Shown: positions 413-31,330, counted from the stretch's first letter. The stretch is 32,000 nucleotides of DNA from Wallemia ichthyophaga EXF-994 (GCF_000400465.1 NW_008806275.1:249656-281655); one strand, 5' to 3'. The notes: a model not told the origin generated them from the letters alone. Numbers and translations are program-made.

Positions 413-898
413 TCAATTGAAAAGACATGGATCGTATTTGCCAGAGGCGATAAACTTCTCCTTCTCCTCAGGAGTGTATCCACACTTGTCCTTTTGGACC
501 TGGCTTCCTTTCTCCTTGTTTCCACTTTCTGGCTCCTTTGGTGATTCTTTTTGATTTTCCTCTGGTTGCTTTGCTGGTGTTTCTTTTTTATTATCCTCTG
601 GCTGCTTGGATGGCTCAGATGATTCCTTGTTTTCATTACCTTCCTTCTTGCCTTCTTCTGGCTGCTTTGATTCGCCCTTGCTCTCCCCGTTGTTTGGGTA
701 GTTACCGGCACCCCAAAGGTCTTCGATCCACTGACCGCTTTGAATAGCTTTGTCAAGAGATCCGTTTTGGTCAGCACCACGCTTGACCTGGACATTGGTG
801 AGCACGCTTTTGCTTATTATTCAACATATACTCACCTCCATCTTGGCGGATGCGAGGACCGTTACTGCGAGAAGACCGACAATGTAAGTTAATTTCAT
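413..898 (-). CDS. Secreted Kex2-processed precursor 1 (about 145 aa), K/E/Q/P-rich
   Basis: Exon 1 898-836 (MKLTYIVGLLAVTVLASAKME, signal-peptide-like). Intron 835-788 (gtgagt...ctcac...ccag, 48 nt). Exon 2 787-413 is in frame with the ORF-track ORF and begins VKR|GADQ. Contains AIQSGQWIEDLWGAGNY, four [SAP]K[QE]PE[EDS]xxKE units and C-terminal FIASGKYDPCLFN. Confidence 0.8.
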
Positions 899-945
899 TG
901 CTCGATTGTAGTTGTAAGTAGAAGAGCAGTGGAAACTGATCTCCT

Positions 946-955
946 TTAAATAGCT
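946..955 (-). promoter_or_regulatory. TATA-like element AGCTATTTAA upstream of precursor gene 1
   Basis: Lies about 48 nt upstream of ATG 898. The identical 10-mer lies about 59 nt upstream of precursor gene 3 (5309-5318). Confidence 0.4.
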
Positions 956-1222
956 TAATATTTGGTAGATGCCGATTTTTTGTGGGATTTAATTTCCTTA
1001 GCCTTCCTTTTTTGGTTATCCGGCGAATTGAAGTATGTCTCACAAGACTAGATGCGTTCATACCTACCAGTATGGTAAGAGTTCTGCACAGCTGCGCCAC
1101 TGAGCAGTTGCTATTAAAGTTTAAGATAAGCTTTTAATAAAGTGTCTCTGCATCAATGTTTCAAAGGTAGCGTGAAAATATTAATGAAACGCAGTACGTT
1201 CTACAATGGTATGCGATGGTAT

Positions 1223-2651
1223 TTAGTGCTCTTCGTTGTGCATGTCTTTCTCGTCATGCTTGTTTTCCTTGTGGTCATCGTGCTCGTGTTTGTCGTCGTG
1301 GTGCTTGTGTTCACCTTTGTGTTCGCCCTTGTGGTTGATTGCCTCCTCGGAGTAGAGCTCTGGGTAGTACTCGCCGCTTGAATTGAGCTCTTTCTCCTCT
1401 TCGTGGGTCAAATGGTGGAAGTCAATGCGACCATCGTGCTGTACTGTGTGAGATAGTAAAGGTACTCAGACGCGCTACTAACCTCATCTCTGGTATGGAG
1501 AGATCTCTTGCCAGCGCCAAAACCTCTAGCACCAGCACCTCTGCTTTCGTGGTGTTTATGTTCATCGTGGCCGTGGTGCTTGTGTTCGCCCTTGTGGTTG
1601 ATAGCCTCCTCGGAGTAGAGCTCTGGGTAGTACTCGCCGCTTGAATTGAGCTCTTTCTCCTCATCGTGGGTCAAGTGGTGGAAGTCAATGCGACCATCGT
1701 GCTGTACTGTGTGAGATAGTAAAGGTACTCAGACGCGCTACTAACCTCATCTCTGGTATGGAGAGATCTCTTGCCAGCGCCAAAACCTCTAGCACCAGCA
1801 CCTCTGCTTTCGTGGTGTTTATGTTCATCGTGGCCGTGGTGCTTGTGTTCGCCCTTGTGGTTGATTGCCTCCTCAGAGTAGAGCTCTGGGTAGTACTCGC
1901 CGCTTGAATTGAGCTCTTTCTCCTCATCGTGGGTCAAGTGGTGGAAGTCAATGCGACCATCGTGCTGTACTGTGTGAGATAGTAAAGGTACTCAGACGCG
2001 CTACTAACCTCATCTCTGGTATGGAGAGATCTCTTGCCAGCGCCAAAACCTCTAGCACCAGCACCTCTGCTTTCGTGGTGTTTATGTTCATCGTGGCCGT
2101 GGTGCTTGTGTTCGCCCTTGTGGTTGATTGCCTCCTCAGAGTAGAGCTCTGGGTAGTACTCGCCGCTTGAATTGAGCTCTTTCTCCTCATCGTGGGTCAA
2201 GTGGTGGAAGTCAATGCGACCATCGTGCTGTACTGTGTGAGATAGTAAAGGTACTCAGACGCGCTACTAACCTCATCTCTGGTATGGAGAGATCTCTTGC
2301 CAGCGCCAAAACCTCTAGCACCAGCACCTCTGCTTTCGTGGTGTTTATGTTCATCGTGGCCGTGGTGCTTGTGTTCGCCCTTGTGGTTGATTGCCTCCTC
2401 AGAGTAGAGCTCTGGGTAGTACTCGCCGCTTGAATTGAGCTCTTTCTCCTCATCGTGGGTCAAGTGGTGGAAGTCAATGCGACCATCGTGCTGTACTGTG
2501 TGAGAGTCTAAAGACAAACAGCATAACAACCTACTTTATCTCTAACACGGAGAGCTCTCTTGCCGGCACCAAAACCTCTGACATCAAGAGGAGCAGCCGT
2601 AGAAACGGAGAGGACGGCAGCGACGACGAGGAGAGCGATTGATGATCTCAT
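1223..2651 (-). CDS. Secreted His-rich Kex2-processed repeat precursor 2 (about 402 aa, 6 exons)
   Basis: Exon 1 2651-2535 (MRSSIALLVVAAVLSVSTAAPLDVRGFGAGKRALRVRDK). Five 44-nt introns: 2534-2491, 2271-2228, 2008-1965, 1745-1702, 1482-1439. Four 219-nt exons each encode the same 73 aa (HDGRIDFHHLTHDEEKELNSSGEYYPELYSEEAINHKGEHKHHGHDEHKHHESRGAGARGFGAGKRSLHTRDE). Terminal exon 1438-1223. The repeat period 263 = 219 + 44, so splicing restores one open frame. Confidence 0.85.
1320..2505. repeat. Near-perfect tandem repeat, 263-bp unit, about 4.5 copies, each unit one exon plus one intron
   Basis: Identical 88-aa read-through ORFs end at 1408, 1671, 1934 and 2197 (period 263). Only a few substitutions separate the units, e.g. 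gatagcctcctcgga vs gattgcctcctcaga. Confidence 0.97.
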
Positions 2652-3037
2652 TGTTGCACGGTGTGTTGTGTTGTAGTATGAAAAGAAGCTTAAAATCCTA
2701 TTTAACTTGCTCGTGCATTCCCCACATTTTAGCGTCAAACTAATTTTTTTCATCTTCAAACATGCATGACTTGAGAGGTATGAATGTCTATCTACATCAT
2801 ATATTGTAGTCAGTTCATGAGATATCAATCAGTGAAAGTAAAGATCATATCGATTATGTCTTGAGGAATTCCAAACCGGTAGAGAACATTCTTAAGTTTA
2901 GAGAATAAAATTTATTAAGGATGCTTAGTACAAATACTCCAATTTAATTCAGTGTGTTGAGTGATCAAGAATGCGAGAAGAGACGAGTGAGAATTGAAGA
3001 AGTCAAGACATCTACCATTGTCCATAACCTATTAAGC

Positions 3038-5250
3038 TTATTGTTGTTGCTGCTGCTGAATTCTTTCCCGTTGGGTTTGGATAGATTGCTGGAGCTGCTC
3101 TTGCTGGTATTGTTGTTGCTCCTTCTCCCAAGCAGTTTCTCTCTTCCATTGAGCTTGACCTTGACCTTTGCCGTGTTCGTAGTTCTCTTCACCCCATAAG
3201 CATTCGAGGTATTGACCAGATTGGACAGCGTGTTCAATCTCTTCATGGCTCATGTGGCAGTGGTTATCGCCATGACCGCCTTTCTCGCCGTGACCATGCT
3301 CGCGACCATGTTCTTCACCGTGGCCGTGGTCGTGACCGTGACCATGCTTTTGCTCTTGCTCATGTCTCTTCCATTGACCTTGAACTTGACCTTGACCTTG
3401 AACTTGACCTTGACCTTGAACTTGACCTTGACCTTGAACTTGACCTTGACCTTGAACTTGACCTTGACCTTGAACTTGACCTTGACCTTGAACTTGACCT
3501 TGACCTTGAACTTGACCTTGACCTTGAACTTGACCTTGACCTTGAACTTGACCTTGACCTTGAACTTGACCTTGACCTTGAACTTGACCTTGACCTTGAA
3601 CTTGACCTTGACCTTGAACTTGACCTTGACCTTGAACTACCTTGCTCGTGACCATCGCCACGCTTGTGGTGATCATGGTGATCATCGCCTTGGTGAGCTT
3701 GCTGGTGTTCTTGTTGTTGGATACGTTCACGTTGGGTTTGGATAGATTGCTGGAGCTGCTCTTGCTGGTATTGTTGTTGCTCCTTCTCCCAAGCAGTTTC
3801 TCTCTTCCATTGAGCTTGACCTTGACCTTTGCCGTGTTCGTAGTTCTCTTCACCCCATAAGCATTCGAGGTATTGACCAGATTGGACAGCGTGTTCAATC
3901 TCTTCATGGCTCATGTGGCAGTGGTTATCGCCATGACCGCCTTTCTCACCGTGACCGTGTGTGTCACCATGCTCGCGACCGTGACCTTGCTCGTGACCAT
4001 CGCCACGCTTGTGGTGATCATGGTGATCATCGCCTTGGTGAGCTTGCTGGTGTTCTTGTTGTTGGATACGTTCACGTTGGGTTTGGATAGATTGCTGGAG
4101 CTGCTCTTGCTGGTATTGTTGTTGCTCCTTCTCCCAAGCAGTTTCTCTCTTCCATTGAGCTTGACCTTGACCTTTGCCGTGTTCGTAGTTCTCTTCACCC
4201 CATAAGCACTCGAGGTATTGACCAGATTGGACGGCGTGTTCAATCTCTTCATGGCTCATGTGGCAGTGGTTATCGCCATGACCGCCTTTCTCGCCGTGAC
4301 CATGCTCGCGACCATGTTCTTCACCGTGGCCGTAGTCGTGACCATGACCCTCAACTTGCTCGTGACCGTGACCACCGCCGCGTTTGTGGTGATCATGATG
4401 ATCATCGCCTTGGTGAGCTTGCTGTTGTTGCTGCTGCTGAATTCTTTCACGTTGGGTTTGGATAGATTGCTGGAGCTGCTCTTGCTGGTATTGTTGTTGC
4501 TCCTTCTCCCAAGCAGTTTCTCTCTTCCATTGAGCTTGACCTTGACCTTTGCCGTGTTCGTAGTTCTCTTCACCCCATAAGCATTCGAGGTATTGACCAG
4601 ATTGGACAGCGTGTTCAATCTCTTCATGGCTCATGTGGCAGTGGTTATCGCCATGACCGCCTTTCTCACCGTGACCGTGTTTGTCACCATGCTCGCGACC
4701 GTGGCCTTGCTCGTGTCTGTGCTCTTCACCGTGGCCATTTCCCTGTCCGAATCCTGAGCGTCTACCGTGCTCGCGATCCTCTTGCTCCTTCTTGTGCTCA
4801 ACGACGGCGTGCTTCTTTGCTTCAAAGTCATCTTGACGCTTGTGGTGGCCTTCGTGACCGCCGTGGACATCGGCTGCAGTGATTCTGTGACCGTGACCAT
4901 CTTCACCACCATGTGGACCAGCTGGTGATCCAATAGGGCCTCCGTGGCCGTGGAAAGGTGCCTTATTGCCCTGCTATAAGCGTGTTAGATGGTTGTGCAG
5001 ATAGTAAGACACCACCCACCATTTCGCCGTGGCCGTGTTGCTGCTCTTCGTGACGCTTTCCTTTAGCGCCCTTTGAAGGTGCAGCTTTGGTTGCTTTTCC
5101 GCCGCCTTTACCCATGTTCTCCATGCCTTGGAGTCCCTTGGTGAGCGGGTCGGTGACTTTCTGGATGAGGCCGCGTTGCTCAAGTGGAGCAGCTGTGGAG
5201 GCTGAGAGAATAGATGCGACGAGAGCGATGAGTGTGATTGAGAACCTCAT
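3038..5250 (-). CDS. Secreted His/Gln/Gly-rich Kex2-processed repeat precursor 3; frameshift at about 3638
   Basis: Exon 1 5250-5020 (MRFSITLIALVASILSASTAAPLEQR...KGKR|HEEQQHGHGEM). Intron 5019-4974 (gtgggt...ctaac...tag). Exon 2 from 4973 is in frame with ORF 3360..4634. Four copies of HCHMSHEEIEHAVQSGQYLECLWGEENYEHGKGQGQAQWKR|ETAWEKEQQQ...; the fourth lies in another frame (stop at 3038). As sequenced it gives about 614 aa ending in an RS tail (stop 3360), or about 720 aa if the frame is restored. Confidence 0.8.
3040..4700. repeat. Four long coding repeat units (about 345-375 bp) within precursor 3
   Basis: Homologous positions at 4627, 4252, 3907 and 3246 (spacings 375, 345, 661). The 661 spacing is not a multiple of 3 and includes the minisatellite. 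Confidence 0.95.
3374..3637. repeat. 18-nt minisatellite (GTTCAAGGTCAAGGTCAA on the minus strand), about 15 copies, encoding VQGQGQ
   Basis: gaac recurs every 18 nt from 3382-3385 to 3634-3637 (252 nt = 14 periods). The array is perfect. Confidence 0.98.
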
Positions 5251-5308: not shown

Positions 5309-5318
5309 TTAAATAGCT
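5309..5318 (-). promoter_or_regulatory. TATA-like element AGCTATTTAA upstream of precursor gene 3
   Basis: Identical to the 10-mer upstream of precursor gene 1, at a similar distance from the ATG. Confidence 0.4.
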
Positions 5319-11261: not shown

Positions 11262-13790
11262 CTACGTCAGGCTATCACCACGAGGCGGTGGCTGAGGCAT
11301 GGAGTCCATACGCTTGTTTATATTTAGTGGCGCTGTACTGTCGCTTGATGGGCTGTCGCTGACTCTGTCTCGATTGCCTCTCTTGAAAGCGCCCGCGGTG
11401 AGTGTGCGAGGGCTGGTTCCACCATGGTGCATTGGAGGGGAGAAAGTGACGTGGGGCGAGTTGTTCTGTGAATGTGTGTATGTGTACGTGTGTGCATTTG
11501 CATTCGCATACGGCGAATCATACATCTGCATTGGTGCATTCGCAACTCCTCCTGGTGGTGTATCATACGGGTTGATCAGTGGGGAAGTGATTTCCGACGG
11601 TGCAAATGTGCGGTATGAGTGGGAATTCTCCATACCACCATCTTCCTTAGGTGGGGCTGGCGGGGCTGGCAGGGCTGCTCTCTCTACCTCTGCGTCTCTC
11701 TCCACCTCCCTCTTTATCCCACTCCCGTCAACTCTCTCATCTAAGGTATATGGCGCCTCGTTGAGCTGATATCTCGGTATGTCGTCCGCCAAGTGTGTTT
11801 GCGCGTGTGAGGATGCGTCTGAGAGAGCAAAAGCAGGAGCAGGAGCAGGAGCACTGTCTTCATACTGGTCGTTGTATTGGTTGTTGTAGTTCGAGTCACC
11901 TCTGTGAGTGTGCCCCTCGTTATAGTTGTAACCGTAGTTATAAGCAGGAGGCAGCGGTGACGCCTCGCGCGACTCCCCTTCCTCCTCCTCTTCCAGCCCG
12001 ATTCCATGTATGGCTCCTTCTCGCCTGTCTACTTGGGGGCTGTCTGGCTGGGCGAAGTGCACCTGTGGAGTGTGTGCGGTGTGTGGTTGTGATACCTCGT
12101 ATGAGTGCGGGTGTAAGTGTGGATGTGTGTGTGGGTGTGTGTGTGAGTATCCCGGTGCATCAACACCACTCTCCCTCTCCCCTTCACCACCTACATCCAC
12201 ACTCGACAGATTAGGCGGCGTTACATTCTCGGCTTCGGGAGCATTGGGCTGCACATACTCACTCTCACGCTCACTTTCCCCACCTACGAGTATGACGCTC
12301 GGTTTAGTGTTGAGTATAGGTGCGGGAGTGACGCTGCTCGCGCCGACGCCCCCGCCTACACTTTCGCCTGTGCCTCCCCACACAGGTGCATCATTGTATC
12401 CTCCGGCGTGGTTACGCGCAAAGAAAGCGCTGCTGTCGTAGTCATACTGTGCGTTCTCGCCGCGCGCGCGTCTAAGAGAGTTAGCTGAGGGGACTGGGGA
12501 ACTGTGTGTGTGGTGGTGGTAGAGGGGTGTGTCGTCTTTTTCGGAGCTAAAGCTGCCACGCGGCTTTTGATCCATGTGCAACAGCGGTGGTGGCTGTGGG
12601 GGTGACTGAGACTTGGCTTCATCATACGCATTACTGTATGCGTTGGGGTTGTTGCTGGTGCGGAAATCGCCATTGCTGTCAACAGAGTTGAGTGATGCCG
12701 ATGCTGTGTGGTAACCCATCCACGGCTTGGTTTCTGGTGCAACTTGCGGCAAGTCGTCAACAGCCGCGGCAGCTTCTACATCCGCTTTCAAAGCGGAATC
12801 TACTGTGTCTGCGAGGTTTACATCGCGGCTGTCGATGCGTGGTGCAAAGTCGTTGGCTGAGACATCCAGCTCAGGTGGTCGAGATGTAAGAGGAAGTGGT
12901 CCAAAGGAAACTTGAGCAAGAGCCTTCTCTGCCTCTTCTATTATATGAGCCGTTTGCTCACTCCCGCTATAAACAGGATGTGGCTGTCCCGGGGAGGACG
13001 ATTCGAGCTGTATCTCCTACAGAGGTCTGTTAGCCGCACAAACACACCCACTAAACAATGTCCACTCACCTCTAAAAGCAACTTTCCCATTTCACCAACG
13101 ATCGACACTTTCTCAGCATATTCGACGAGGCTGCAGAATTTGTATCCTAGTGCCGTCTTTGTTGTTGCGCGTTTGTAGTCCCAAAGCACCGCCTCGGAGT
13201 TAAGCACTTCTACGTCAAGCTCCGACGCCTGCTGACGGAAACTCTCGAGAAGCTGCGTCTGCTGCGGGAGGTTCTTATTCTCAGTGTTCATCTTTGCGAG
13301 TTTCTTCTCGGCCGACTCGATTTTGCCAGCGAGAGCCTTCCTGCGCTTCTTGACGTCGTCGAGCTCCTCCTCGCGCGTGCGGATGCGCTTGAACTGCTCG
13401 CGTATCTTTGACTGGTAGGACGCGGCAGTGGAGGTGGCAGCAGCCAAGTGGTGAATGAGGGTGGAAGCAGCCCCGCAGACATCCTGAGAGGGATAATTAG
13501 GCGTTGGTCACGGGAAAAGAGGGAAATCACCTTGAGATCATCACCCTCTCCCCATCCCCAGCTCTTGAGATTCTCAGCCACCTTCTCAACTTCCCTGGAT
13601 GCGTGCATTGTACTGAGGCTGTTAGCTGCGGTTATCGCCCACTGAGATTGCCCGCGTACCTCGCCATGGAAACTTTCTCGGATGTGATGACGTCCTGGAG
13701 CACCTTGATATCTTTGTTGCCAAGCGCAGACAGGAACTGGTTGTGCGCCATCTGCGTCTTAAGGCTGCCGAGTTTACCTGACATGGACAT
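11262..13790 (-). CDS. Eisosome Pil1/Lsp1-family BAR-domain protein with long disordered C-terminal tail
   Basis: Exons encode LGNKDIKVLQDVITSEK, LKSWGWGEGDDLK, IREQFKRIRTREEEL and EAVLWDYKRATTKTALGYKFCSLVEYAEK (Pil1-like). ORF 11262..12791 supplies a P/S/H/Y-rich tail. Confidence 0.75.
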
Positions 13791-29307: not shown

Positions 29308-31330
29308 CTATATTTCTCTCTGAAAAGCTCTAAAAATGTCTTGATACGAAGGTGCAGCGTGGTGATGCGATTGCGATTGATTCTGCGACTGTGACTGCAA
29401 CTGACTCACACCCCCAACCCCACTCTTACCACTCTCATACAGGTAGTCGTTGATGAGTTTCTTGGTTCCGTCGGTGATATGCGTCTCGTCCAACCCATTG
29501 CTGAGGTTTGTAACACTGTCGATGGTATCTGGCAGCGCGTGTGTGTAAGGCTGGACGCTGCTGGCTGATGAGAAGGTGGATGTAGATGTCGACGAGCAGC
29601 TCGAGCCTAATCCCGCCCCAACAATCACTCCATGACTGCTTGATTCCTGCGTTGTTCCCGGCAGTGCTTCCATATAACTGAACATCTGTGCCTCTGTTTC
29701 TGCTTCTGCCTTGGGTATGTCGATAGGTACACTCTGGGTATGTTGTGAAGGGATATCGCCGAAGACCTGGTTGATGTAGTTGAAATTGTCGTTGTGATAG
29801 TAGGTATCGCCAATATCGCCAATGCCACCAGCACCACTACCGTCAACACCCTCACTGCCATCTACATCCCCCAACACCATATCGAAATCGAAATCCATCC
29901 TTGCGTCACCCAAGTCGTCACCATACCCATGCCGCGTGAAATCAAGACCATATTCAAGACATGTGTTGTCTATAGCAGCCCATTCGTTAGCCAGATTTGC
30001 CGCTGTTGCCGGTGCGAGCATTACCGCTGGATCGTAAGCCAGATTGGAGAGTGAGGAGGCTTGCGGGTTTGCGTCTGAGTTTGACACGTCTAGTGCGGAA
30101 TCTGACACCCATCCACTCCCACTCCCATTCCCACTCACTTCCTTCTCTTCCATATTGATGTAGTGGTCCATTTCCAGTCGCAGGTAGGGCGGTATGGCGG
30201 ACATGTACATGTCTTCTGGGTGTGTTGGGTGCGCGTAGTGCTTGCACTGCGTGTAGCTGCTCGATGGCTCTGACTGTAAGAATGAGGGTGGTGATGACAG
30301 TGACTGTGAGTACGAGTGTGGATATGAACGTGAAGACGCCGATGCTGTGTCGCTGAATGTGAATGCTGGTAGCTGATTCTCACTCTCATCTATTTCTCGC
30401 TTCACTTGTGCCTCGTCAAAGCTGAGATCAACCGCGAGAGTATTACCAGCGTGTAAGGTTGTTTTCTTGTCATCCTCATGGTTTCTGCTCGCCTCCTCTC
30501 TCCTTCTAAGGCTGTTTCTACTTTTGGTTTGTGCGTTCGCTCTCCCGCGGCGTTGGCCGATGTAGCTAGTGTCCTGTTCGTTGTCGCTGTCATTCTTCTC
30601 ATACATTTCCGTTTCCATCTCCTTTTCGCGCGCCACTTCTGCTTCTTGTTTCTCCCTAATAAGCTCCTCCAGCTCTCTGTGCGCGTCTGTCTCTTTCCTA
30701 CGTGCGCTCTGCGCACCCCGCCCGCTCTTCACCGGCCGCTGTCCCCTCGCGGCGGACTTGGAGCGCACACCTCCACTCTCTTTCCTGCGCGGCTTGTATT
30801 GGTATTCGGGATACATGAGCTTATGCTCCCGCTTCACCTGCTCAGATTTGGCGAGGTAGTGCTCGCGCACCTCCTCCGTCTCATTCAGCCAGCGCGCAGA
30901 CAGATTTTTCGACAACTCCGTCTGTGACTCCCTCAGACACTGTGCCGGCTTCGCGGCCGCTTGCTCCTGTCTGTCGCAGTCGTGAGGTGTGACGTGTGCG
31001 TGTTGACATTTGCTACTCACTTGATCTTCGCTAGACTTTCCGACCGGTAGAGTATCCATGCACTGGTTGGGTGTGAGGCGATGCCGTGTGGTGCGCTGCT
31101 GCTCCAACTCACTTGGCTGGACGCGGCACTTTGGATTTGTTTCTTGATCTCGATTTCTTCGCCGGTTGTGGTGGGTTGATGTGGCTGTGGATGTGGATGT
31201 GTTTCGGATTCTCATTCTGACTCTGCCTCTGATCCAAAGACCCAACACAGATGAACTGTACATCTCCCTCCTTTATTTCGCTCATCTCGCTCATCGGTTT
31301 ATATTCTGAGACCTGTTCGCTTTCGAACAT
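29308..31330 (-). CDS. MATA-type HMG-box transcription factor
   Basis: ATG 31330. Two 50-nt-scale introns give KVPRPAN|AWILYRSESLAKIK|QEQ...QTELSKNLSARWLNETEEVREHYLAKSEQVKREHKLMYPEYQYKPRRK, a canonical HMG box, followed by a long low-complexity C-terminus. Confidence 0.9.

What the first reader, a model, noticed from the sequence alone, without database searches (positions are those of the whole stretch)
413..5250. Tandem cluster of three secreted Kex2-processed repeat-peptide precursor genes: a candidate undescribed peptide system
Seen: three adjacent minus-strand genes, each with an N-terminal hydrophobic signal peptide, an early intron, a pro-segment ending in R/KR (VKR, LDVR...GKR, LEQR...GKR) and repeated charged/His-rich units. 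In genes 2 and 3 the units are delimited by KR. Established: fungal Kex2-processed repeat proteins release peptides with varied roles, e.g. Candida Ece1/candidalysin, Ustilago Rep1 repellents, alpha-pheromone precursors and dikaritin precursors. Inference: this is a lineage-specific paralog cluster that releases several distinct peptides from three precursors, with no tailoring enzyme visible nearby. Possible roles are cell-wall or aerial-surface structure, metal or water binding in a xerophile/halophile, or signalling.
Basis: partly seen in the sequence, partly recalled or inferred. Interest (0 to 1): 0.88.

Follow-up and report, generated by a model that had tools for sequence, protein, structure and literature searches.

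The report
Secreted histidine-rich repeat proteins of Wallemia
Three neighbouring genes of the extreme salt-loving fungus Wallemia ichthyophaga encode secreted, very acidic, water-loving proteins found only in this genus; two are histidine-rich and have recently been multiplied into repeats that a standard fungal protease should cut apart. They are real and uncharacterised but belong to an already known class.

Summary
Window 413-5250 (minus strand) carries three real genes of Wallemia ichthyophaga EXF-994: g1 = J056_002088 (145 aa), g2 = J056_002089 (402 aa) and g3 = GME559_g (about 710 aa). Each has a signal-peptide-like N-terminus, a short intron and a pro-segment ending in KR. g2 has five 73-aa units and g3 has four units of 115-125 aa, all bounded by KR.

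New here: all three share a conserved ~35-aa helix-turn motif, [CF]H[ML][ST]HEE.E...(Q/S)SG.[YW]...L[WYF]. It occurs 11 times in the cluster and nowhere else in the window. The family is found only in Wallemia among 1.84 billion representative proteins, with conserved gene order.

g2's orthologues, and a fourth paralogue outside the window, have a single unit. The KR between g2 units is a duplicated copy of the propeptide site, and each unit carries its own intron. So the repeat-precursor architecture is recent and derived. g1 is not a repeat precursor.

g3 is transcribed and 2.4-fold higher at 30% NaCl. All predicted fragments are long, acidic, extremely hydrophilic and mostly disordered. They look like extracellular cation- or water-binding polypeptides rather than signalling, antimicrobial or RiPP peptides.

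This is a new member of the known Kex2-processed repeat protein class. Interest is moderate.

The parts
413..898 (-). g1 (J056_002088, 145 aa). Exon 1 is 836-898, the intron is 788-835 (48 nt) and exon 2 is 413-787. Layout: signal peptide, KMEVKR pro-site, N-terminal motif copy, K/E/P-rich linker, C-terminal Cys-Cys motif copy.
   Evidence: Identical to EOR04010.1/XP_009266227.1. The intron-less orthologue P0002 reads RMEVKRGAE across the junction.
946..955 (-). TATA-like 10-mer AGCTATTTAA, 48-57 nt upstream of the g1 ATG. The same 10-mer lies upstream of g3.
   Evidence: only two matches in the window, 0.02 expected by chance.
1223..2651 (-). g2 (J056_002089, 402 aa). Exons: 2535-2651, 2272-2490, 2009-2227, 1746-1964, 1483-1701, 1223-1438. 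Introns (44 nt each): 2491-2534, 2228-2271, 1965-2008, 1702-1745, 1439-1482. Layout: signal peptide, pro-region ending GKR, then five 73-aa His-rich units. Four end in GFGAGKR and the last has an H/D/E/K tail.
   Evidence: Exact match to EOR04011.1.
1317..2505 (-). Tandem array of the 263-bp g2 unit (intron + core + linker copied from the pro-region), 4.5 copies. Units 1-3 are identical and unit 4 differs by two synonymous changes.
3038..5250 (-). g3 (GME559_g, about 710 aa). Exon 1 is 5020-5250, the intron is 4974-5019 (46 nt) and the long exon starts at 4973. Layout: signal peptide, basic pro-region ending GKR, His/Gly-rich segments, then four units. Each unit is a His-rich tract + Cys-Cys motif + WKR + Gln-rich segment + HHKR. 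Stop at 3038 if the frame is restored at 3607-3640.
   Evidence: Protein sequence and expression are in Table S6 of PMC3849046.
3607..3640 (-). Frame break in g3. A 34-nt GT..AG segment, if spliced, gives exactly the 710 aa of the published model. Read through instead, the frame runs into an (SSRSRS)n tail with a stop at 3360. It may be a true mini-intron, a real frameshift or an assembly error.
   Evidence: It has no branch-site-like CTNAC, and it is shorter than the 44-48-nt introns of the cluster.
3374..3638 (-). Perfect 18-bp microsatellite, 14.7 copies. It encodes (GQGQVQ)n in the frame that continues into the fourth unit.
5309..5318 (-). TATA-like 10-mer AGCTATTTAA, 59-68 nt upstream of the g3 ATG.
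416..4652 (-). Eleven copies of the shared ~35-40-aa motif. g1: 416-496 and 671-778. g2: 1310-1429, 1576-1692, 1839-1955, 2102-2218, 2365-2481. g3: 3155-3271, 3816-3932, 4161-4277, 4536-4652.
   Evidence: Profile search of the six-frame translation, (domain scores 45-66 bits). No hit elsewhere in the 32 kb.

Best explanation
The cluster encodes a Wallemia-specific family of secreted, intrinsically disordered, strongly acidic and hydrophilic proteins. g2 and g3 are also histidine-rich. All are built around one small conserved element: an N-capped helix ([ST]xEE...), an SG turn and an aromatic return segment (Y/W...L-W/Y/F). A single disulfide (C-x19-C) probably staples this element in g3 and in the C-terminus of g1.

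Proposed route: the signal peptide takes the proteins into the ER, and Kex2 in the late Golgi removes a short propeptide at a conserved KR.

In W. ichthyophaga, g2 and g3 were recently enlarged by tandem duplication. For g2, the duplicated block ran from the pro-region through the intron to the core. The propeptide KR therefore now recurs between units, making the protein formally a Kex2-processed repeat protein. Cleavage would release five ~71-78-aa polypeptides from g2. From g3 it would release alternating ~66-77-aa His-rich motif pieces and ~45-aa Gln-rich pieces. g1 stays a single ~121-aa product.

The products most likely stay in or around the thick cell wall. There they would act as hydrophilin/dehydrin-like binders of divalent metal ions and water in brine, with the aromatic mini-motif mediating attachment or self-association.

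Shown: gene structures, paralogy, lineage restriction, purifying selection, the derived nature of the repeats, and transcription with salt induction of g3.

Inferred: secretion, Kex2 cleavage, the disulfide, metal and water binding, and wall location.
For: - Gene models equal the reference annotation.
- The motif occurs 11 times in the cluster and nowhere else in the window.
- A profile search of 1.84 billion representatives returned only Wallemia g1, g2 and g3 relatives, plus a few repeat proteins judged analogous.
- Gene order g3-g2-g1-TFIIE-beta is conserved in a W. sebi-complex genome (L004). It is conserved without g2 in another Wallemia (L005).
- The KR after the pro-region is conserved. 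g1: MEVKR|GA, MEVKR|GA, TKR|GD. g2: GKR|ALRVRDK, NKR|ALLTRDE, LKR|GISARDE, TKR|GVLTRDE.
- The g2 core has dN/dS of 0.11-0.14 with dS near saturation. The g1 C-terminal motif is 100% identical at 83% nucleotide identity.
- The g2 inter-unit linker SRGAGARGFGAGKRSLHTRDE copies the pro-region VRGFGAGKRALRVRDK, and the units are 99-100% identical including introns.
- Single-unit relatives exist: P0027 (W. mellicola), L004, L006, and g4 (P0022/L008).
- All Kex2 fragments have pI 4.4-6.2 and GRAVY -1.2 to -2.4. The g2 fragments and most g3 fragments have 11-22% His; the g1 product has none.
- AlphaFold2 gives pLDDT 80-84 for the g3 motif with a helix at EEIEHAVQSG, and about 40 for the His-rich tract. 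The g2 unit is mostly disordered.
- g3 RPKM rises from 10.5 to 25.0 between 10% and 30% NaCl, FDR 2e-57.
- KEX2 was not among the proteases reported missing from Wallemia.
Against: - No experimental evidence exists for secretion, cleavage, the disulfide or metal binding.
- SignalP and ProP could not be run.
- g1 of W. ichthyophaga has no histidine at all, so metal binding cannot be the common denominator of the family. The orthologue in L005 is His-rich.
- In the L005 g3 orthologue the site after the motif is AR, not KR. Cutting there is therefore not conserved.
- g3 expression is modest, and g1 and g2 are not in the published table of differentially expressed genes.
- The AlphaFold models rest on 7-8 sequences and are low-confidence overall.
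- Unit numbers come from a 2013 short-read assembly. A strain assembly shows only two g2 units, which may reflect collapse in either assembly.
Confidence: 0.45

Rival explanations
1. The proteins are intact modular wall or matrix proteins. g2 and g3 would be secreted largely uncut, apart from propeptide removal, and the repeats would give multivalency: several motif copies spaced by disordered His- or Gln-rich linkers. They would act as a cross-linking or hydrating matrix in the thick wall and the sarcina-like cell clumps.
For: - Family members outside W. ichthyophaga work with one or two motif copies and few or no internal KR sites.
- The Gln-rich segments and the (GQGQVQ)n tract suggest self-association.
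- g3 is up-regulated at 30% NaCl, the condition under which, from my own knowledge rather than any paper read here, the wall is described as thickening.
Against: - KR sits at every unit border in exposed, disordered sequence, which is normally efficiently cut by Kex2.
- The g2 linker is a literal copy of a conserved propeptide cleavage site.
- There is no GPI signal or known wall-anchoring domain.
Confidence: 0.25
2. The proteins are precursors of diffusible signalling peptides, that is, pheromone- or hormone-like Kex2-processed repeat proteins.
For: The architecture fits formally: signal peptide, at least three repeats, and KR between them.
Against: - The products are 45-96 aa, acidic and mostly disordered.
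- There are no STE13 XA/XP dipeptides after KR.
- Relatives have a single unit.
- Basidiomycetes are not known to use such precursors for mating pheromones.
Confidence: 0.07
3. The proteins release histidine-rich antimicrobial peptides, histatin-like, against competitors in brine.
For: Most g2 and g3 fragments have a high His content of 11-22%.
Against: Every fragment except the g3 propeptide is net negative at pH 7 (charge -2 to -14) and lacks amphipathic cationic character.
Confidence: 0.05
4. The proteins are precursors of modified cyclic peptides (ustiloxin/dikaritin-type RiPPs).
For: Signal peptide plus KR-delimited repeats, with Tyr-rich GEYYPELY in g2.
Against: - No DUF3328/UstYa, tyrosinase, P450 or peptide-modifying methyltransferase was found in the ORFs of at least 120 aa scanned across the 32-kb window.
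- The units are 73 aa or more, not 8-14 aa.
- The whole 40-aa core is under purifying selection, not just a tetrapeptide.
Confidence: 0.02
5. The repeat numbers, and the g3 frame break, are artefacts of short-read assembly. The real genes would have fewer or different numbers of units.
For: - The reference was assembled from short reads with k = 21.
- A strain assembly has g2 shorter by exactly three units (789 nt).
- Units 1-3 are 100% identical.
- The frame break lies at the edge of a 265-bp perfect microsatellite.
Against: - Unit 4 carries two private synonymous changes and unit 5 a distinct tail, so at least three unit types exist.
- The strain assemblies used 150-nt reads with k up to 120 and would themselves collapse 263-bp repeats.
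- Contigs of other samples break at the repeat.
Confidence: 0.15

Closest known systems
Kex2-processed repeat proteins (KEPs) as defined by Le Marquer et al. 2019 (PMC6339444) and Umemura 2020 (PMC7329392)
   Same: g2 and g3 have a signal peptide, at least three near-identical internal repeats and KR at each repeat border. Both surveys scanned Wallemia genomes. Le Marquer et al. counted six KEPs in W. ichthyophaga and noted that basidiomycete yeast-like fungi tend to have long KEP peptides.
   Different: The units are very long (45-78 aa), acidic and disordered. Most are His-rich, and the motif-bearing ones carry a conserved folded mini-motif. Each g2 unit contains its own intron. The repeat state is demonstrably derived from a single-unit proprotein that is still present in sister species and in a paralogue. 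g1 does not meet the definition.
Ustilago maydis Rep1 repellent precursor (from the account in PMC6339444 and my own knowledge)
   Same: It is a basidiomycete secreted precursor cut by Kex2 into roughly 35-55-aa peptides that stay on the cell wall. It has no STE13 signature and no modification enzymes.
   Different: Repellents are amphipathic and make surfaces hydrophobic. The Wallemia fragments are among the most hydrophilic possible (GRAVY about -1.6 to -2.4). No sequence similarity was detected.
Hydrophilins / plant dehydrins with His-rich metal-binding tracts (own knowledge, not tested)
   Same: Gly is above 6% and hydrophilicity is extreme. The proteins are disordered, carry HK(G)EH/HH tracts and are linked to low water activity.
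   Different: Those proteins are intracellular and lack signal peptides, KR processing and the SG-aromatic motif. There is no homology.
Blastomyces BAD1 adhesin tandem repeats (own knowledge, a lead only)
   Same: It is a secreted fungal protein made of many short tandem units, each a small disulfide-stapled, aromatic-rich loop with acidic residues that bind divalent cations.
   Different: There is no sequence similarity. BAD1 is not cut by Kex2 between units, and it comes from a different lineage with a different biology.
Vertebrate histidine-rich glycoprotein (the automatic UniRef name of g2)
   Same: High histidine content only.
   Different: There are no cystatin domains and no Pfam match. 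The name is a compositional artefact.

Membership tests
Kex2-processed repeat protein (KEP) | N-terminal signal peptide | tested here: inconclusive
   By eye, all three start with M-K/R, have 13-15 hydrophobic residues, and end in ASA or STA before the pro-region. No SignalP-type predictor was available.
Kex2-processed repeat protein (KEP) | At least three near-identical internal repeats | tested here: met
   g2 has five units and g3 has four. g1 does not meet this: it has two divergent motif copies and no true repeat unit.
Kex2-processed repeat protein (KEP) | KR/RR/KK between the repeats | tested here: met
   g2 has GAGKR at each of four internal borders. g3 has WKR and HHKR in every unit. 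g1 has a single KR after the propeptide.
Kex2-processed repeat protein (KEP) | Actual cleavage by Kex2 and release of the units | not testable with these tools
   This needs peptidomics or expression in KEX2 versus kex2-deletion yeast.
Ustiloxin/dikaritin-type RiPP precursor | DUF3328 (UstYa) gene, often with a tyrosinase, near the precursor gene | tested here: not met
   Pfam scans of 20 ORFs of at least 120 aa spread across the 32-kb window found only housekeeping domains. Only one flank is in the window. The other flank in L008 holds TFIIE-beta, g4, a HAD hydrolase, an RRM protein and an SPX transporter.
Ustiloxin/dikaritin-type RiPP precursor | Short repeated core (about 4-14 aa) as the conserved element | tested here: not met
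   The conserved element is about 40 aa and the units are 73 aa or more.
Alpha-factor-like pheromone precursor | STE13 dipeptides (XA/XP) after KR and peptides of 9-24 aa | tested here: not met
   KR is followed by AL, SL, HE, QD, ET, GG or GD. Fragments are 24-96 aa.
Hydrophilin (criteria from memory: Gly above 6%, high hydrophilicity) | Composition | tested here: met
   Gly is 9.7% (g1), 10.7% (g2) and 17.6% (g3). GRAVY of the mature proteins is -1.75 to -1.81. This is a compositional class only, not a homology family.
Histidine-rich glycoprotein (UniRef name of g2) | Cystatin-like domains / sequence homology | tested here: not met
   No Pfam family was found at E below 0.001.
Hydrophobins (the secreted family known to be expanded in W. 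ichthyophaga) | Eight-cysteine pattern | tested here: not met
   There are 0-2 Cys per unit and no Pfam hydrophobin hit.

The most novel reading that the evidence does not exclude
The cluster defines a new, genus-specific extracellular mini-domain family: an SG-aromatic helix-turn, sometimes disulfide-stapled, embedded in His-rich acidic disordered chains. The family would be part of how Wallemia copes with extremely low water activity, for example by holding water and divalent cations in the wall. g2 would capture the birth of a Kex2-processed multi-peptide precursor from an ordinary single-unit proprotein, through tandem duplication of a block containing the propeptide cleavage site and an intron.
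Probability: 0.3. Interest if true: 0.6.

Novelty: new member of a known kind. Interest (0 to 1): 0.4.

Why it matters
[quoted passage not shown] A genus-restricted, salt-responsive family of secreted, acidic proteins, two of them His-rich, is a concrete candidate for an extracellular adaptation that can be tested. g2 also gives a clean natural example of how Kex2-processed repeat precursors arise: a single-unit proprotein in sister species, a duplicated propeptide site between units, and one intron per unit. The class itself is well known and very diverse, and the genes were probably already counted in surveys, so the advance is incremental.

Tried and rejected
- Pfam scans of the three proteins and of orthologues gave nothing above noise.
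- A word-indexed homologue search with g3 found nothing. Proteins encoded by the window itself appear to be hidden from the search libraries, which explains why g2 and g3 were missing from the results.
- A spliced protein could not be looked up by the look-up of encoding contigs.
- A search for the SRA run numbers in papers found nothing.
- A PDB sequence search with the motif profile gave only chance-level hits. One was the helix-turn segment of NtrC-type AAA+ proteins, at E about 0.6-1.
- Non-fungal profile hits were considered as relatives: a DPANN archaeon MAG protein with more than 20 'LTPEQIDKAIDKGEYLDVLY' repeats and a bacterial secreted protein with 'MTPEELHEAVQSGQTIEELA'. I set them aside as probable convergence on a generic N-capped helix-Gly-turn pattern. 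Their E-values come from summing many weak repeat matches, and they share no flanks, cysteines or context.
- I could not retrieve which six W. ichthyophaga proteins the KEP survey scored. Its Table S2 is not held as text.
- Expression values for g1 and g2 could not be found. They are not in the differential-expression table, and the all-genes table is truncated.
- AlphaFold2 on the g2 unit gave a low-confidence, mostly disordered model, so no fold search was run.

Full report
**What is there**

The minus strand of window 413-5250 holds three genes.

- g1: exons 898-836 and 787-413, 145 aa.
- g2: six exons between 2651 and 1223, 402 aa.
- g3: begins at 5250, has a 46-nt intron at 5019-4974, and runs to 3038.

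My spliced g1 and g2 proteins are letter-for-letter GenBank EOR04010.1 (J056_002088) and EOR04011.1 (J056_002089) of Wallemia ichthyophaga EXF-994. The window is therefore from the reference genome of this obligate halophile. g3 is gene GME559_g of the genome paper (PMC3849046, Table S6), with the same first exon and intron.

Intron-less orthologues in another Wallemia read straight across the g1 and g2 junctions: RMEVKRGAE and LLTRDEQDHHDDHIDF. A third species has a 42-nt intron at the same phase-0 position in g2. The introns are therefore real.

**Anatomy**

Each protein starts with a typical signal-peptide pattern, followed by a short pro-segment ending in KR.

g2 then has five 73-aa units: HDGRIDFHHLTHDEEKELNSSGEYYPELYSEEAINHKGEHKHHGHDEHKHHESRGAGARGFGAGKR SLHTRDE. 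The DNA unit is 263 bp, present 4.5 times at 99% identity. It includes a 44-nt intron, so the reading frame survives only through splicing (219 nt = 73 codons). Units 1-3 are identical, introns included. Unit 4 has two synonymous changes. Unit 5 has a different H/D/E/K tail.

g3 has four units of 115-125 aa. Each unit is a His/Gly-rich tract, CHMSHEEIEHAVQSGQYLECLWGEENYEHGKGQGQAQWKR, a Gln-rich segment, and HHKR.

At 3638-3640 the frame of g3 breaks, at the edge of a perfect 18-bp microsatellite (3374-3638, 14.7 copies). Removing the 34-nt GT..AG segment 3607-3640 gives exactly the 710 aa of the published model. That 'intron' is shorter than the real ones (44-48 nt) and has no branch-site-like sequence. 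It may be a gene-finder's repair of a frameshift or of an assembly error.

g1 is different from the other two. It has one KR, no histidine, a K/E/P-rich linker and no true repeats.

**A shared motif makes them one family**

All three genes carry a ~35-40-aa element: [CF]-H-[ML]-[ST]-H-E-E-x-E-x-x-x-(Q/S)-S-G-x-[YW]-x-x-x-L-[WYF]-x-E-x-x-Y-x-H. A profile of it finds 11 copies in the cluster (two in g1, five in g2, four in g3). It finds none in the other 27 kb in any frame. g2 and g3 also share a nearly identical signal peptide. The same 10-mer, AGCTATTTAA, lies 48-68 nt upstream of the g1 and g3 start codons and nowhere else in the window.

**Distribution**

The profile was scored against 1.84 billion representative proteins and gave 13 hits at E < 0.001. 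The fungal ones are all Wallemia, or unlabelled metagenome or run-assembly sequences that are clearly Wallemia by synteny and similarity:

- g1 relatives;
- g2 relatives, including W. mellicola WALSEDRAFT_67262, found by a second profile search;
- g3 relatives.

Pfam has no family for any of them. The PDB has no similar sequence.

A 5-kb contig of a W. sebi-complex genome (L004) has the order g3-g2-g1-TFIIE-beta. An AT-rich Wallemia scaffold (L005) has g3-g1-TFIIE-beta.

In a W. ichthyophaga strain assembly (L008), a fourth, single-unit paralogue (g4, P0022) lies beyond TFIIE-beta, outside the window. It is 94% identical in DNA to the 5' part of g2.

**Constraint**

The g2 core has dN/dS of 0.11-0.14 against two orthologues, with dS near or beyond saturation. 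Twenty-five core positions are invariant across species. The C-terminal motif of g1 (KDKCGYTPEEKEKFIASGKYDPCLF) is 100% conserved at 83% DNA identity. The charged linkers are free to change. The g1 linker is K/E/P-rich here, D/K-rich in L004 and H/D/K-rich in L005.

**How the repeat precursors arose**

Every g2 relative outside this gene has one unit: W. mellicola, L004, L006 and g4. The KR after the pro-region is conserved in all of them.

The linker between W. ichthyophaga g2 units, SRGAGARGFGAGKRSLHTRDE, is a copy of the pro-region VRGFGAGKRALRVRDK. The duplicated block therefore ran from the 3' end of exon 1, through the intron, into the core. The propeptide cleavage site was multiplied along with it.

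For g3, an orthologue has two motif copies but AR instead of KR after the motif, and only one RR between copies. The KR-delimited design is thus recent and specific to W. ichthyophaga, not ancestral.

Unit numbers need care. The reference is a 2013 short-read assembly. A strain assembly has g2 shorter by exactly three units, but it was made from 150-nt reads that would collapse such repeats.

**Expression and properties**

g3 is transcribed. Its RPKM is 10.5 at 10% NaCl and 25.0 at 30% NaCl (log2 1.26, FDR 2e-57). g1 and g2 are not in the differential-expression table.

If Kex2 cuts at every KR/RR, g2 yields five pieces of 71-78 aa. g3 yields alternating 66-77-aa His-rich motif pieces and 45-aa Gln-rich pieces. 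g1 yields one 121-aa product.

Apart from the basic g3 propeptide, all pieces are acidic (pI 4.4-6.2) and extremely hydrophilic (GRAVY -1.2 to -2.4). The g2 pieces and most g3 pieces are 11-22% His; the g1 product has no histidine.

AlphaFold2 with shallow alignments gives pLDDT 80-84 for the 20 residues SHEEIEHAVQSGQYLECLWG, with a helix at EEIEHAVQSG. It gives about 40 for the His-rich tract. The g2 unit is mostly disordered with a short helix at the same place.

**Most likely mechanism**

The proteins are secreted. Kex2 removes a propeptide and, in g2 and g3, cuts between units. The products are disordered, acidic chains, His-rich in g2 and g3, each carrying one small structured aromatic motif. 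They most plausibly sit in or near the wall and bind divalent metals and water, much like extracellular hydrophilins. The motif would serve for attachment or self-association.

The gene-level parts of this account are shown. Secretion, cleavage, the disulfide and the function are inferences. I put 0.45 on the whole statement.

The main rival, at 0.25, is that g2 and g3 act largely uncut as multivalent matrix proteins. Signalling, antimicrobial and RiPP readings fit poorly, for these reasons:

- the pieces are long and net negative;
- they lack STE13 sites;
- no DUF3328, tyrosinase or similar gene is in the window or on the other flank.

**Comparison with what is known**

g2 and g3 meet the operational definition of Kex2-processed repeat proteins. 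Le Marquer et al. 2019 counted six such proteins in W. ichthyophaga EXF-994 and listed both Wallemia species among the richest relative producers. Umemura 2020 also scanned Wallemia genomes. I could not retrieve which proteins they scored.

KEX2 was reported missing only from lineages that do not include Wallemia.

No paper in the searchable library links Wallemia with histidine-rich proteins. A search for W. ichthyophaga with 'secretome' and 'cell wall' returned 13 papers, none of which appears to concern these proteins.

The family is therefore an uncharacterised new member of a known class. Two features are instructive: the shared mini-motif and the visible origin of the repeat state.

**Verdict**

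Novelty: new member of a known kind.

Noticed in passing
L008 3440-3943 (GCA_004917865.1, SPOD01000009.1); outside the window, beyond window position 1: A fourth family member, g4 (P0022/P0021/P0005), lies between TFIIE-beta and a HAD hydrolase in W. ichthyophaga. It is a single-unit copy of g2, 94% identical in DNA including about 90 nt upstream of the ATG. It is absent at that place in the W. sebi-complex contig L004.
   Followed up: partly
window 3374-3640: A perfect 18-bp microsatellite with 14.7 copies, encoding (GQGQVQ)n, has a frame break at its 5' edge. The published gene model needs a 34-nt 'intron' there. Read through, the frame gives an (SSRSRS)n tail instead.
   Followed up: partly
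P0004, P0008, P0013 (P0004 is named as a Candidatus Diapherotrites archaeon MAG; the other two were not looked up) and P0010 (bacterial secreted protein): Long non-fungal proteins made of many tandem ~25-aa 'LTPEQIDKAIDKGEYLDVLY' units, and a bacterial 'MTPEELHEAVQSGQTIEELA' repeat, match the Wallemia motif profile at E down to 6e-14. No Pfam family covers these repeats. They are probably a convergent helix-turn pattern, but this remains unexplained.
   Followed up: partly
window 946-955 and 5309-5318: An identical 10-mer, AGCTATTTAA (TATA-like), lies upstream of g1 and g3 only. This hints at shared promoter architecture.
   Followed up: yes
window 29308-31263 (minus strand): A large ORF with an HMG box. 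The population-genomics paper places HMG-box genes in the putative mating-type region of W. ichthyophaga. I did not check whether this is that locus.
   Followed up: no
window 11262-12791 (minus strand): A 509-aa ORF with no Pfam match. It is Pro/His/Tyr-rich, with a HTHPHTHPHLHPH tract and no signal peptide seen.
   Followed up: no
P0027 (W. mellicola WALSEDRAFT_67262): The pro-region of the W. mellicola g2 orthologue is itself internally duplicated (PVYLERR twice). It carries four dibasic sites (RR, RR, RR, KR) before the conserved core.
   Followed up: no
UniRef100_R9AV83 (g2): The automatic UniRef name 'Histidine-rich glycoprotein' for g2 reflects composition only. There is no homology to the vertebrate protein.
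   Followed up: yes
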